Under the pieces are notes generated by a model. The model searched no databases. It was not told the origin of the DNA and saw nothing but the letters and a program-made list of their open reading frames with translations. From sequence record NC_048054.1: a stretch of DNA of 64,000 nt, one strand, 5' to 3'. Both the position numbers and the translations under genes were made by a program. Positions 2,010 through 32,747 of this stretch are shown here, one piece after another. The first letter of the stretch is position 1, and the number at the start of each line of letters is the position of its first letter.

Positions 2010-2711
2010 ATGAAAAAGATTCAAACTAACATCTTACCAACCGAAGCTCTGCATGGTCTTATTCACGGCTACGCGCGTCAGGCTAAACAACCAGACGCTG
2101 CAAGCAAGACGTTGTTCTACATTGACGTCACTGAGCGTGGTGCTAACGATGCACTGTACTCCATCCTTCGCCGTGATATTCCTTCAAACATCGTCGGTAC
2201 TGCGTATGATTCTATTGTTAGTTTCCGTGGCCATACAGCGCCGCCACAACTTCCTATCGTACTGTCCGAAAGTTTATTCCACATAAGTTTAGAGAGACTC
2301 GCCAGTTCGCTGGCAGGCATCTTTGATGCGCTCGGTCGTACAGTACATACTAACGACACTCAAATCACTATCTACGGCGAACCAGCAATCGAGAAACTTC
2401 TGGCGATTGTTCGAGACACTCAGTTTAAGAACTTCTTGGAAGTGTGCAATCCTGAGCTTGCCTGCGGTGATTTCGATCTACAGTCCAACATCACTGTGGA
2501 CAACTTTGTGTCTATGGCAATCGACCCTGATTTTGAAAAGCGTATTCCAGAGAGCCCTGGTACCACATACGCGTTTGGCCGAGACTTCATGTTCATGCAC
2601 TATGAAGACCTGCACAAAGTCATTCAACTGTTGCGCAAATATAAAAAGAATTGTACGCTGCATCCAGACTTAATGCGCTACTACTTCATGAACGTAATCT
2701 GTAAATATTGA
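2010..2711 (+). CDS. hypothetical protein, probable paralogue of 3859..4626
   Basis: AGGAG RBS; C-terminal KYKKNCTLHPDLMRYYFMNVI resembles KFKKNHRIIFHEDFRRLFFEEYI of the 3859 ORF. Confidence 0.8.
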   Translation: MKKIQTNILPTEALHGLIHGYARQAKQPDAASKTLFYIDVTERGANDALYSILRRDIPSNIVGTAYDSIVSFRGHTAPPQLPIVLSESLFHISLERLASSLAGIFDALGRTVHTNDTQITIYGEPAIEKLLAIVRDTQFKNFLEVCNPELACGDFDLQSNITVDNFVSMAIDPDFEKRIPESPGTTYAFGRDFMFMHYEDLHKVIQLLRKYKKNCTLHPDLMRYYFMNVICKY

Positions 2712-2759
2712 TCACCAACCGAACACAAATGCTGTGTGTAGTCTAGCCCGATTTGGGCA

Positions 2760-2792
2760 GGGGAGAGCCGGATGGCCTCCCCATTTTTTTTT
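2760..2792 (+). terminator. Rho-independent terminator
   Basis: GGGGAG(A)GCC-GGAT-GGCCTCCCC then A plus nine T. Confidence 0.8.
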
Positions 2793-2815
2793 GTCTACGC
2801 CAGCAGGAGAATCGC

Positions 2816-3814
2816 ATGTCTAAATCAAAATCAACGCCACAGACCTTCCTCGATCTATTCCTAAAGGACGTTAGAAAGTTTTTGCCTATGTTCGACAAAG
2901 GCTTAGATGCACACTTCTTAAAGTGCAAGGGAAAGCCAGGTACTTCTGGTGTCTCATTACATCAATACCTGAAGTGGTTAAGTCCTATCGCTAAACCGCC
3001 AGAGAATGCAAGCAAACTCTCTATAGTTATCTCTGGCTACCTGCATTACTTCTGGCAGTTGTCTAAACCTAACTTCGTGTTTGAGCCTGTGCTCATGAAT
3101 CACATGGCAGACTCAGATCTGCCTGAGAAAATACCTGCCGAAATTCTGCAACGCTTACCGTACTGGTGTCAGTGGATAACATTGCCTATACATCTGGCGA
3201 GCGCTGCACAGACGATGCAGTTAGACTTTGATGGTGCGTTTGTTGGTTACACCGAAATCGACAGGCGGCCTGCGCTGATTCTTGTCGCGCCCTTTGTTGC
3301 CTCTGACGAAAGCATCAAGACAAACGGCTTCACACCTTCGGTGACGTCATATGTTTACCTTGACGAGCCTGTTGACCACCTATCATTCATGAAGAATAGT
3401 CATTTGCTGAATGTCAGTGACCGAATGCCTGACAGATTCTTTCAGGAGTTGATGTTCAGCGTATACCACTACGTGACCAAGATTGTTAATTGTGTCATGT
3501 ATATCTGCTCGCAGCAACAAGCACTGTATCAAGAAGGTCATTCTCAGCCTAAGCCGCAGCGTTTAGGTAAGAGCTATCGCATCACGCCACCGAAAGATGA
3601 TCGCATTATCACGGTCGGCGCCGAGATGACCAAGATTCTCAAAGACTTCGAAGCAGAAGTCGAAGCGTGTACTCGCGCTTTCAATGGGCGTAAGCCGCAT
3701 ATACGGAAAGCGCATTACCACCACTTCTGGACAGGACCGAAAGTAGGAGTTCGTGTTCTTGTCTGTAAGTGGTTGCCACCAAGTATTGTTCGCGGCACTA
3801 TCGTAGAACAATAA
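2816..3814 (+). CDS. AcrVA2/FinQ-family protein
   Basis: Start revised to ATG 2816 (AGGAGA RBS). Motifs DLPEKIPAEILQRLPYWCQWI, NCVMYICSQ and RKPHIRKAHYHHFWTG...CKWLPPSIV match the remembered AcrVA2 motifs LPDDTPTSIFLNLPDWCVYV, YLLWLCVAE and RPHIRRGHWHGYW...RWQPAVFV. Confidence 0.7.
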   Translation: MSKSKSTPQTFLDLFLKDVRKFLPMFDKGLDAHFLKCKGKPGTSGVSLHQYLKWLSPIAKPPENASKLSIVISGYLHYFWQLSKPNFVFEPVLMNHMADSDLPEKIPAEILQRLPYWCQWITLPIHLASAAQTMQLDFDGAFVGYTEIDRRPALILVAPFVASDESIKTNGFTPSVTSYVYLDEPVDHLSFMKNSHLLNVSDRMPDRFFQELMFSVYHYVTKIVNCVMYICSQQQALYQEGHSQPKPQRLGKSYRITPPKDDRIITVGAEMTKILKDFEAEVEACTRAFNGRKPHIRKAHYHHFWTGPKVGVRVLVCKWLPPSIVRGTIVEQ

Positions 3815-3858: not shown

Positions 3859-4626
3859 ATGAAATCTCGTGTACAACATGCGTATATCCCTGATATGGGA
3901 TCGTTTGACCCTTACGTCCGCTCTCTGTGCCATATGGCGCGAGCACTGGAAAACAATGGCCTGAACTATGGCAAGTCAAAGCCTGTCGTAATCATCGGCA
4001 CTTCGAAACGCGTAGTTGAAGCCTACGTTAAGCAGTTGCTCAACACAAACAATCTACCGAACACCCTTATTTGCTTTGGCGTAGACGAGCCGCCTGTCAG
4101 CCATCGTGATTATACTTACGCTGGTGCCCATGTTGTGCTGATGCACGACCTGACGTATGTTTGCAGCGACACAATGAACAAGGTTGCCACACGCGTTCTC
4201 GAAATCATCGACAGCCTCAAACAGAAAGAAGGTGACACTGACCTCAAAAACAGTGAGCTGTCTTTGGTGTACTCGAACCCGCATTTGTGGTCTGCTATTC
4301 TTGACTACGGCGCCGCTTCTTTTATGAACATGGCTGGACGCAACATTGAATACCGAAGCGGTTTGGTTTCATCTATCGGCCTCGACGCGTTAATGAAGTG
4401 CGAAAGCAACCAAGAGTACCATGAGCTTCGTGCCGAAACTATTACGATCGGCCTGGAGTTCTTCTGTGTGCGTACGGACTACCTACTGTCTAAGGTACAT
4501 AACTTGCTGTGGTCGCTCGCGTGTGATGACTGCAAGTTCAAAAAGAATCATCGCATCATCTTCCATGAAGACTTCCGTCGCCTATTCTTTGAAGAATACA
4601 TCCTCAGGGACTTCAAGGGCTTTTAA
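3859..4626 (+). CDS. hypothetical protein, probable paralogue of 2010..2711
   Basis: Start revised to ATG 3859 (GGAGG RBS); C-terminal similarity to the 2010 ORF. Confidence 0.8.
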   Translation: MKSRVQHAYIPDMGSFDPYVRSLCHMARALENNGLNYGKSKPVVIIGTSKRVVEAYVKQLLNTNNLPNTLICFGVDEPPVSHRDYTYAGAHVVLMHDLTYVCSDTMNKVATRVLEIIDSLKQKEGDTDLKNSELSLVYSNPHLWSAILDYGAASFMNMAGRNIEYRSGLVSSIGLDALMKCESNQEYHELRAETITIGLEFFCVRTDYLLSKVHNLLWSLACDDCKFKKNHRIIFHEDFRRLFFEEYILRDFKGF

Positions 4627-4700: not shown

Positions 4701-4961
4701 ATGTGCGGTCGTAGCCTTATCAGGTTGAAGTACAACGCACGGTCCTCGAACTGGTGCAATAATAAAGTAAACGCTTGTAGTAAGCGGAAGGCGACCAACG
4801 TACAATGCGAAGATTTTCTGGCAGCAACGAAAAACTGCCGCAGTGTGCAAGAGTCGTCCAGTGTTGTTTCTTTCTTTGATGGTCAAGAGCTGGTTGGTCA
4901 GGCTGTATGGCATGAGATAGAAGGCGACAATACACTTCAATTCCGGTTGCTACTTGCTTAA
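4701..4961 (+). CDS. hypothetical Cys-containing protein (86 aa)
   Basis: GGAGA RBS; ends just before a terminator. Confidence 0.6.
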   Translation: MCGRSLIRLKYNARSSNWCNNKVNACSKRKATNVQCEDFLAATKNCRSVQESSSVVSFFDGQELVGQAVWHEIEGDNTLQFRLLLA

Positions 4962-31644: not shown

Positions 31645-31702
31645 TGACGCTACTCACACGAGGAGCCTTACGTGGGTTCCTCATTATCGTAATATAAACA
31701 CT

Positions 31703-32017
31703 ATGGCAAAGAAAACTTATCTGCTACCTCGTGAGCGCCCAAGCCCGTTGCCTAATCTACGAGCCTATCTCGCGTTTCTCGCCCGGAAGCCTAATGCTAA
31801 TCGCGCAGTATTAGAATCGTATTGCAAAGCAAGTCTGGCACAAATGGCGCGCGGCCGTTTCTTTGTAGGTAAGCTCTTTGGCTACAAGGTGTATACGAAA
31901 TCGAACAAGCTCGCATACACGGTTGTGTGGATTGACCCATACAACTACGATTGTCTTGTTCTAAACCATCAAAGGAGAGAAGTAGAGTTTAAAAACCTTT
32001 ATGGCCTGCTTTTATAG
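31703..32017 (+). CDS. hypothetical basic protein
   Basis: ATG 31703 chosen; the track's upstream extension overlaps the previous gene. Confidence 0.6.
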   Translation: MAKKTYLLPRERPSPLPNLRAYLAFLARKPNANRAVLESYCKASLAQMARGRFFVGKLFGYKVYTKSNKLAYTVVWIDPYNYDCLVLNHQRREVEFKNLYGLLL

Positions 32018-32054
32018 TTAGGTCCTAGCGCCTTCACACTAGGGGAATCTTCCG

Positions 32055-32732
32055 ATGATAACTGTTCTTAACAATCGTACCGACGAGGTAATTAAACGCC
32101 TGAACGTAGCAGTATGGGTATGTGTCGCAATCATGTTTGCTGTCTTCATCGCAATCGTGAGTAACGCAAACGCCAGTATGTCTACAGGCCCTGACAACGC
32201 CATTGATCTTTCATCTTCCGTGTCACTCGATCCCTCCAATCGTGTGGCAACCAAATACAAGGAGATAGAAAAGGCAGTAGCCGCAAAAGAAGAACGAAGG
32301 CCCAAACGTTATGTAACGAGAGAGCGCCTCCGACAACTCTATGCGCACTTGCCGCATCCGTCTGACTTAGGCAAGCAGATTGATTTGGCCGCAGAGAAGT
32401 ACAACGTAGATGCAAAATTGCTTCTATCGATCTGCGTGTCCGAGTCGCATCTTCGTGCAAAGGTCAGGAACAAGTCCGGAGCTACAGGCCTGTGTCAAAT
32501 CATGCCTAAAATGCACGGACGTTCTGTACGGGAACTCATGGACTACCGAATCAATGTTGATCAGGCAGCCCAGATTGTTGCGTTACTAAACAAGCAGTGT
32601 AGAGGCAGACGCGCCTGCGTCATCCAAAGTTACAACACTGGTTGGGGAGCATATTTGAGAGGGGTACGTGCCCCACAATATTTAGCGAAAGTACAGACTG
32701 AGTATCGCCGCAAGCATACTCCATCTTCCTAA
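32055..32732 (+). CDS. soluble lytic transglycosylase (SLT family) with N-terminal TM helix
   Basis: AAEKYNVDAKLLLSICVSES (catalytic Glu), SGATGLCQIMP, NVDQAAQIV, SYNTG; TM segment VAVWVCVAIMFAVFIAIVSNANA. Confidence 0.9.
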   Translation: MITVLNNRTDEVIKRLNVAVWVCVAIMFAVFIAIVSNANASMSTGPDNAIDLSSSVSLDPSNRVATKYKEIEKAVAAKEERRPKRYVTRERLRQLYAHLPHPSDLGKQIDLAAEKYNVDAKLLLSICVSESHLRAKVRNKSGATGLCQIMPKMHGRSVRELMDYRINVDQAAQIVALLNKQCRGRRACVIQSYNTGWGAYLRGVRAPQYLAKVQTEYRRKHTPSS

Positions 32733-32747
32733 TAAGAGGACATAATA

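What the first reader, a model, noticed from the sequence alone, without database searches (positions are those of the whole stretch)
2816..3814. AcrVA2/FinQ-family protein in a lytic jumbo phage
Seen: three motif blocks spaced as in AcrVA2, including the diagnostic C-terminal R-x-P-H-I-R-x-x-H-x-H-x-[FY]-W-x-G...W-x-P. Known: AcrVA2 down-regulates Cas12a by translation-coupled mRNA destruction, and the homologous plasmid protein FinQ inhibits F tra expression. Inferred: Cas12a is uncommon in enterobacteria, so this copy may silence a different host defence or conjugation transcript by recognising its nascent peptide. It is insulated by an upstream terminator and has its own RBS.
Basis: partly seen in the sequence, partly recalled or inferred. 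Interest (0 to 1): 0.8.

Follow-up and report, generated by a model that had tools for sequence, protein, structure and literature searches.

The report
AcrVA2/FinQ-family gene in jumbo phage
A gene labelled "hypothetical" in the Dickeya jumbo phage AD1 is a genuine member of the AcrVA2/FinQ family of gene silencers, and related phages that are otherwise almost identical carry very different versions of it at the same spot, so its still unknown target probably varies between phages.

Summary
The window is Dickeya phage vB_DsoM_AD1 (Alexandravirus, 261,658 bp). ORF 2816-3814 (+, 332 aa; GenBank AD1_242, "hypothetical", annotated from a later ATG) matches the AcrVA2 crystal structure by sequence (E 9e-6 alone, 2.3e-23 as a profile) and by fold (Foldseek E 3e-9, the only significant PDB hit). 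It also matches plasmid proteins named FinQ. The residues that AcrVA2 needs for mRNA down-regulation are conserved (W80, H295, R297, H300).

The family is large (about 4,500 clusters at 50% identity) and was already reported on plasmids and megaphages, mostly in hosts without Cas12a. This is therefore a new member of a known kind.

One result goes beyond the finding. The gene sits at a fixed locus downstream of the UvsX-like recombinase in every related phage examined, but as deeply divergent alleles that do not follow the phage backbone. For example, pEa_SNUABM_23 and _40 have 100% identical UvsX and about 99% identical flanking DNA, yet their versions of this protein are 32-33% identical. 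The swapped stretch runs from just after the upstream hairpin to the conserved C-terminal motif. Within an allele class dN/dS is 0.05-0.20.

The target and the mechanism were not tested. The "insulated" claim is weak, because no promoter-like site follows the hairpin.

The parts
2712..2792 (+). Conserved intergenic element: stop of the preceding gene, small hairpins, then the terminator-like hairpin and T-run. It is also the 5' boundary of the swapped cassette.
   Evidence: This stretch is nearly invariant in 8 phages, whatever allele follows and whichever gene precedes. Divergence begins right after the T-run.
2760..2792 (+). Intrinsic-terminator-like hairpin (6+3 bp stem with one bulged A, 4-nt loop) followed by nine T.
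   Evidence: Sequence and RNA fold. pEa_SNUABM_23 and _40 carry one change on each side of the outermost stem pair that keeps the pair.
2805..2809 (+). Shine-Dalgarno AGGAG, 6 nt before the ATG.
   Evidence: Sequence. Alleles of other classes carry their own purine-rich stretch at this position.
2816..3814 (+). AcrVA2/FinQ-family protein gene, 332 aa plus stop (AD1_242, annotated from 2888).
   Evidence: PHROG 6160, E 3e-50. dN/dS 0.05-0.20 within its allele class.
3038..3085 (+). Motif block 1 (residues 75-90). W80 corresponds to AcrVA2 W79 and E90 to AcrVA2 D89.
   Evidence: HMMER alignment to 7ci1_A. W80 is nearly invariant in A1 and A2.
3122..3175 (+). Motif block 2 (residues 103-120), with invariant P107, L114, P115 and W117.
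   Evidence: It is the best conserved block outside the C-terminus.
3689..3790 (+). Motif block 3 (residues 292-325). H295, R297 and H300 correspond to AcrVA2 H286, R288 and H291. H302, W305, G307, W319 and P322 are also invariant.
   Evidence: These AcrVA2 residues are needed for mRNA down-regulation.
2797..3769 (+). Swapped cassette: RBS plus about 318 codons with no nucleotide similarity to the allele of phage vB_Ea_2910A, although the flanks are 90-92% identical.
   Evidence: blastn of L001 against L002. The same pattern is seen for pEa_SNUABM_23 against _40, with 99.3% and 98.8% flanks.
3859..4626 (+). Downstream gene AD1_243 (255 aa, no family match). It is probably co-transcribed, since the gap is 44 nt and holds no hairpin followed by a T-run.

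Best explanation
The ORF encodes a functional member of the AcrVA2/FinQ family (Pfam PF26125 in the precomputed annotation of its relatives). Shown: homology by sequence, profile and fold; conservation of the residues AcrVA2 needs for activity; purifying selection; one copy at a fixed locus after the SSB and UvsX-like genes in four related jumbo-phage genera; and replacement of the gene body by deeply divergent alleles between phages that are otherwise nearly identical. Inferred: like AcrVA2, the protein binds a short peptide of a specific target protein, probably as it emerges from the ribosome, and through the conserved C-terminal H-x-R-x-x-H module causes loss of that protein's mRNA. Under this reading, the variable body (residues 1-100 except W80, and 121-220) sets which target is recognised and the conserved C-terminal end carries the effector function. 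The conserved upstream hairpin and the conserved C-terminal coding stretch would also serve as homology arms that let co-infecting phages exchange the specificity part. The target is most likely not Cas12a but a host defence or other host protein that varies among Erwinia and Dickeya strains.
For: Homology: AcrVA2 7ci1 at E 9e-6 and at E 2.3e-23 with a profile of 15 alleles. Foldseek finds 7ci2_A at E 3.2e-9, TM 0.56/0.59, the only PDB hit at E<=0.001 (model pLDDT 71.7, pTM 0.72). Proteins named FinQ and 'AcrVA2 family anti-CRISPR protein' were recovered.
Key residues: W80, H295, R297 and H300 align with the tested W79, H286, R288 and H291.
Selection: dN/dS 0.05-0.20 at dS of about 1.
Fixed locus.
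Allele swapping: UvsX against this protein is 100% vs 32% (SNUABM_23/_40), 98% vs 30% (AD1/2910A) and 98% vs 32% (SNUABM_30/phB78). The reverse also occurs: 82% vs 90% (2910A/phB78).
Junctions: they lie just after the T-run and inside the C-terminal motif.
Conservation: it is concentrated at residues 101-120 and 281-332. Across the library most relatives match only from about profile position 80, or only the C-terminal third.
Literature: C-terminal domain conserved, N-terminal part divergent, homologues mostly in hosts without Cas12a.
Against: No function was measured. How AcrVA2 itself brings about mRNA loss is still unknown. The gene is present in every related phage examined, which is unusual for an accessory counter-defence gene and could point to a housekeeping role in infection. 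The AD1 allele is 90-91% identical to alleles of Erwinia phages, so one allele class serves on two host genera; any target must be shared by both or belong to the phage. The whole region after UvsX is mosaic (g240, g241 and g243 also vary), so allele exchange is not unique to this gene. The structure model has only moderate confidence, and residues 1-60 are poorly predicted.
Confidence: 0.6

Rival explanations
1. It is a true anti-CRISPR against Cas12a, like AcrVA2 itself.
For: It is homologous to AcrVA2 and keeps the residues AcrVA2 needs for activity.
Against: Identity to AcrVA2 is only about 16-20%. In the pairwise alignment, one of the three AcrVA2 residues reported to contact a Cas12a peptide aligns with an alanine, although the alignment is uncertain in that region. 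The CRISPR types reported in the Dickeya papers I found (both on D. zeae) are I-E, I-F and III-A. Marino et al. report that most homologues occur where Cas12a is absent. Several deeply divergent alleles in phages of one host species fit poorly with a single conserved target.
Confidence: 0.05
2. It is a FinQ-like weapon against rival mobile elements. It would silence genes of resident plasmids, prophages or co-infecting phages rather than host defence genes.
For: FinQ, a homologue recovered here, lowers mRNA of F-plasmid transfer genes. Allele diversity would match diversity among rival elements.
Against: A lytic jumbo phage gains little from blocking conjugation. No plasmid or prophage target is known in these hosts. 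This was not tested.
Confidence: 0.15
3. It is a host-takeover or self-regulating factor that belongs to the core infection programme. It would act on a conserved host gene or on the phage's own transcripts.
For: One copy is present at the same place, next to the SSB and UvsX-like genes, in all 13 related loci examined across four genera. Selection within a class is strongly purifying. The same allele class occurs in phages of Dickeya and of Erwinia.
Against: Core regulators do not normally exist as 30%-identical alleles exchanged between phages whose flanking DNA is 99% identical. That pattern is more typical of genes in conflict with a variable partner.
Confidence: 0.2
4. The fold is retained but the protein works as a plain stoichiometric binder or inhibitor of a finished protein, or acts at the nucleic-acid level as first proposed for FinQ, without translation-coupled mRNA decay.
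For: AcrVA2 also binds mature Cas12a and a Cas12a peptide in crystals. The way mRNA is lost is unknown for every member of the family.
Against: The H-x-R-x-x-H residues are dispensable for binding but required for mRNA loss in AcrVA2. They are invariant here and in all 15 aligned proteins, which argues that the effector function is kept.
Confidence: 0.1

Closest known systems
AcrVA2 (Moraxella bovoculi prophage; PDB 7CI1/7CI2)
   Same: Similar length (332 aa here; the 7CI1 chain has 323). Same three motif blocks and spacing. The fold was recovered as the only significant PDB hit. W79, H286, R288 and H291 are conserved as W80, H295, R297 and H300. Both are encoded on a mobile element.
   Different: Sequence identity is about 16-20%. 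The N-terminal 60-80 residues and the central sheet region are unrelated in sequence. It sits in a lytic jumbo phage of Enterobacterales rather than a prophage with a neighbouring acrVA1. No Cas12a is known in the hosts, though this was not tested. Activity was not measured.
FinQ (fertility inhibition protein of IncI-type plasmids)
   Same: It is a homologue: tblastn E of about 4e-6 to genes annotated 'protein finQ', profile E down to 1e-70 for FinQ-like proteins, and pairwise E 6e-5 to Swiss-Prot FINQ_ECOLX. Blocks 2 and 3 are shared.
   Different: Identity is 19-23%. FinQ is about 30 residues longer, with a C-terminal tail. It is plasmid-borne and acts on F transfer-gene mRNA. The phage protein has no known link to conjugation.
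Putative AcrVA2 of Shewanella phage vB_SbaS_Y11 (PMC10846135)
   Same: It is another AcrVA2-family gene reported in an isolated phage whose host carries a type I-E system, not a type V system.
   Different: That is a 63-kb siphovirus and a single report. No allelic series at a fixed locus was described.
Nascent-chain-triggered mRNA decay in eukaryotes (tubulin autoregulation)
   Same: It is the analogy drawn in the literature for how AcrVA2 works: a factor recognises an N-terminal peptide and the mRNA being translated is destroyed.
   Different: There is no homology. This is only a 'works like' comparison, and it rests on the inferred mechanism.

Membership tests
AcrVA2/FinQ family (PF26125) | Significant sequence similarity to AcrVA2 over most of the protein | tested here: met
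   phmmer E 9e-6, query 60-325 against chain 60-316. Profile of 15 alleles E 2.3e-23, chain 56-318 of 323.
AcrVA2/FinQ family (PF26125) | Significant similarity to FinQ | tested here: met
   Named 'protein finQ' hits in plasmids at E 4e-6. FinQ and 'AcrVA2 family' proteins found with the profile. BLASTP E 6e-5 to FINQ_ECOLX.
AcrVA2/FinQ family (PF26125) | Match to the curated family model | tested here: inconclusive
   Relatives 56-90% identical carry precomputed PF26125.1, as do the FinQ proteins. The local Pfam and NCBIfam copies give no hit even for FinQ itself, so they do not appear to hold the model.
AcrVA2/FinQ family (PF26125) | Conserved C-terminal H-x-R-x-x-H (AcrVA2 H286/R288/H291, required for mRNA down-regulation) | tested here: met
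   H295, R297 and H300 align with them and are invariant in 15 divergent proteins.
AcrVA2/FinQ family (PF26125) | Conserved N-proximal Trp and acidic residue (AcrVA2 W79, D89) | tested here: met
   W80 is aligned and nearly invariant. E90 aligns with D89, a conservative change.
AcrVA2/FinQ family (PF26125) | AcrVA2-like three-domain fold | tested here: met
   AlphaFold2 model pLDDT 71.7, pTM 0.72. Foldseek 7ci2_A E 3.2e-9, probability 1.00, TM 0.56/0.59, next hit E 0.06. Confidence is moderate and the N-terminus is poorly modelled.
AcrVA2/FinQ family (PF26125) | Translation-dependent loss of a specific target mRNA | not testable with these tools
   This needs expression data and none is available here.
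Type V-A anti-CRISPR (functional class) | Inhibits Cas12a, and Cas12a is present in the host | not tested
   No Cas12a query could be obtained without typing a sequence from memory. The literature I found lists I-E, I-F and III-A for D. zeae and says most homologues lack a Cas12a host.
Type V-A anti-CRISPR (functional class) | Residues contacting the Cas12a 620-636 peptide (E98, D129, D195 of AcrVA2) | tested here: inconclusive
   E98 aligns with D101 and D129 with A131. D195 lies in a part of the pairwise alignment that is not reliable. These residues were not needed for inhibition in vivo anyway.
Fertility inhibition (FinQ function) | Lowers transfer-gene expression of F-like plasmids | not testable with these tools

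The most novel reading that the evidence does not exclude
The locus is a natural specificity cassette for a peptide-directed gene silencer. Each allele class would recognise the nascent N-terminus of a different host or rival-element protein, while the invariant C-terminal module triggers mRNA loss. Phages would exchange the recognition part by recombination between the conserved upstream hairpin and the conserved C-terminal coding stretch. Natural pairs such as pEa_SNUABM_23/_40, AD1/vB_Ea_2910A and pEa_SNUABM_30/phB78, which over the roughly 11-kb loci compared differ mainly in this cassette, would then point directly to the unknown targets of the non-Cas12a majority of the family.
Probability: 0.3. 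Interest if true: 0.75.

Novelty: new member of a known kind. Interest (0 to 1): 0.45.

Why it matters
AcrVA2 is the only known bacterial example of silencing a gene by recognising its nascent peptide. The family has thousands of members whose targets are unknown, because most occur where Cas12a is absent. This phage group offers a compact, well-sampled set. There is one copy per genome at a fixed locus, at least four deep allele classes (those of AD1, pEa_SNUABM_40, vB_Ea_2910A and pEa_SNUABM_21), and several natural phage pairs whose compared loci (about 11 kb) differ essentially only in the recognition part. That turns 'what else does this family silence?' into a comparison that can be made by observation alone. 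It also corrects the annotation of AD1_242, in both its start codon and its product name.

Tried and rejected
Local family scans: Pfam, NCBIfam and PADLOC scans of the protein found nothing. This is uninformative, because FinQ proteins also get no hit in those copies.

Neighbouring genes: g240, g241, g243, g244 and g245 have no Pfam or PHROG match, so the context gives no functional clue.

Promoter: the sigma-70-type scan found no more sites than in shuffled sequence, and none between the hairpin and the ATG. An 8-mer shared by two intergenic regions (AACCGAAC) is not enriched: 5 matches against 2.35 expected.

RNA genes: Rfam and tRNA scans of the window found nothing.

Supplementary tables: I looked for the AD1 accession and for Erwinia or Dickeya phages in the tables of Marino et al. 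They were not found, but the stored file is truncated, so I cannot say whether these phage proteins were in their tree.

Paralogues: AD1 has a single matching place, so there is no second copy.

Cas12a in the hosts: this could not be tested, because no query was available without typing one from memory.

Full report
**Identity of the window.** The first 8 kb match Dickeya phage vB_DsoM_AD1 (MH460463.1, Alexandravirus, 261,658 bp, host D. solani MK10) at 100% identity. Window base 1 is record base 197,659. AD1 is listed as a jumbo phage in a review of tailed lytic phages of soft-rot bacteria (PMC8472413).

**The observation.**
- The ORF runs from the ATG at 2816 to the stop ending at 3814 (332 aa).
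- AGGAG lies 6 nt upstream of the ATG.
- A hairpin at 2760-2782 is followed by nine T.
- GenBank annotates AD1_242 as "hypothetical protein" from a later ATG at window 2888.
- The longer form is better supported. It has the RBS, the extra 24 residues are conserved in the closest alleles, and pEa_SNUABM_23 and _22 are annotated from the equivalent ATG.

**Homology.** All tests started from the window's own protein.
- phmmer against PDB sequences returns AcrVA2 (7ci1) at E 9e-6, covering residues 60-325 of the query and 60-316 of the chain.
- A profile of 15 proteins (13 jumbo-phage alleles from the fixed locus, two from more distant phages' other loci counted among them, and one plasmid FinQ) raises this to E 2.3e-23.
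- An AlphaFold2 model (pLDDT 71.7, pTM 0.72) finds 7ci2_A as the only PDB hit at E<=0.001 (E 3.2e-9, TM 0.56/0.59).
- tblastn against plasmids returns genes annotated "protein finQ".
- The profile search returns proteins named FinQ, Swiss-Prot FINQ_ECOLX and "AcrVA2 family anti-CRISPR protein". All carry precomputed PF26125.1, as do the close relatives of the AD1 protein.
- The local Pfam and NCBIfam copies give no hit even for FinQ, so their silence means nothing.
- PHROG 6160 (unknown function) matches at E 3e-50.

**Functional residues.** Marino et al. (bioRxiv 10.1101/2022.11.29.518452) showed that AcrVA2 H286, R288 and H291 are needed for loss of cas12a mRNA but not for binding. W79 and D89 contribute moderately. 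The PDB chain is numbered one higher than the paper. On that basis these residues align with AD1 H295, R297, H300, W80 and E90. H295, R297, H300, H302, W305, G307, W319 and P322 are invariant in the 15-protein alignment, and W80 is nearly so.

**Family size.** A full HMMER scan of 1.84 billion representative proteins finds 4,487 clusters at E<=1e-3 and 3,193 at E<=1e-10. Most match only from about profile position 80 onward, or only the C-terminal third. This fits the published picture of a conserved C-terminal part and a divergent N-terminal part. Homologues were already reported on plasmids and megaphages, mostly without Cas12a. The AD1 gene is therefore a new member of a known kind.

**Locus and alleles.** In Alexandravirus, Sasquatchvirus (Y3), Yoloswagvirus and Rivsvirus phages, one homologue sits at the same place: SSB, UvsX-like recombinase, one or two small genes, then this gene. 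Its sequence does not follow the phage backbone.

| Phage pair | UvsX identity | This protein |
|---|---|---|
| pEa_SNUABM_23 / _40 | 100% | 32% (33% by BLASTP) |
| AD1 / vB_Ea_2910A | 98% | 30% |
| pEa_SNUABM_30 / phB78 | 98% | 32% |
| vB_Ea_2910A / phB78 | 82% | 90% |
| AD1 / pEa_SNUABM_30 | 83% | 91% |

- At the DNA level, SNUABM_23 and _40 are 99.3% identical up to 24 nt before the ATG. They then share no similarity for about 920 bp, and are 98.8% identical again from about codon 300.
- For AD1 against 2910A, similarity stops 20 nt before the ATG and resumes 45 nt before the end of the gene.
- The roughly 90 nt upstream, ending at the T-run, are nearly invariant in eight phages, whatever allele follows.
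- The exchanged unit is therefore the RBS plus the body of the gene. Its boundaries are the conserved hairpin and the conserved C-terminal motif.
- Across classes, conservation is concentrated at residues 101-120 and 281-332.
- Within the AD1 allele class dN/dS is 0.05-0.20 at dS of about 1, so the protein is under purifying selection.
- The neighbours g240, g241 and g243 are also mosaic. Exchange is a property of the region, although the clean replacement of this gene alone in the SNUABM_23/_40 pair is striking.

**Transcription.** Hairpins followed by T-runs also come after the UvsX-like gene and g240 and after an unannotated small gene at 4701-4961. The hairpin is therefore not special to this gene. 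Only about 11 nt separate the T-run from the RBS, and no promoter-like site lies there. No hairpin with a T-run separates the gene from AD1_243. The gene is probably expressed by read-through or from an unrecognised phage promoter, together with AD1_243. "Insulated" is not supported.

**Mechanism.**
- Shown: family membership, conserved effector residues, selection, and allele exchange.
- Inferred: peptide-directed, translation-coupled silencing of a target other than Cas12a, with the variable body setting specificity.
- Points against: the gene is present in every relative examined, which is more like a core function. One allele class also serves phages of two host genera.
- Absence of Cas12a from the hosts was not tested. 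The papers I found on a Dickeya species (D. zeae) list types I-E, I-F and III-A.

**Verdict.** The function is inferred and the novelty is modest. The allele series is the part worth following.

Noticed in passing
window 4701-4961 (+): An 86-aa ORF with its own GGAG and a following hairpin plus T-run is not annotated in the AD1 record. It is 99% identical (85/86) to an annotated gene at the same position in Erwinia phage vB_Ea_2910A.
   Followed up: yes
window 31645-32747, ORF 32055-32732 (+): A 1.1-kb stretch has no annotated gene in AD1. It holds a 225-aa ORF that is conserved in 62 phage records (up to 96% identity outside AD1) and is named 'transglycosylase' in RefSeq copies of relatives.
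   Followed up: partly
window 2712-2792; L002, L004-L008, L013 at the same place: The intergenic element before the gene is more conserved than the flanking coding DNA: nearly invariant in 8 phages whose UvsX proteins are 82-100% identical. It holds two or three consecutive hairpins. The outermost pair of the terminator stem changes on both sides in pEa_SNUABM_23 and _40 and the pair is kept. Rfam has no match.
   Followed up: partly
P0017 (Swiss-Prot FINQ_ECOLX) against L003:4740-5822 and P0014: The old Swiss-Prot FinQ entry follows the family motif only as far as the H-x-R. It then departs from the H-x-H-x-x-W part that present-day finQ genes and all phage alleles keep. Whether this is a real variant or an artefact of the old sequence was not examined.
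   Followed up: no
L015:4890-5891 (Erwinia phage vB_EamM_RisingSun gp126): A family member (25% identity to the AD1 protein; Foldseek E 1.5e-16 to its model) is annotated 'putative mycothiosynthase' in the record. That name is probably wrong.
   Followed up: partly
window 2010-2711 (AD1_241) and the same locus in L004, L005, L007: The 233-aa gene before the finding is present in some relatives at 93% identity, at 30-53% in others, and absent from pEa_SNUABM_23, _30 and _40. The last bases before the conserved intergenic element are nevertheless the same with or without it.
   Followed up: no
L011:4872-5915 (Dickeya phage vB_DsoM_JA13): A second, unrelated jumbo phage of the same host strain (Salmondvirus) carries a 29%-identical family member in a different context, directly followed by a gene annotated as a (p)ppGpp synthetase/hydrolase.
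   Followed up: no
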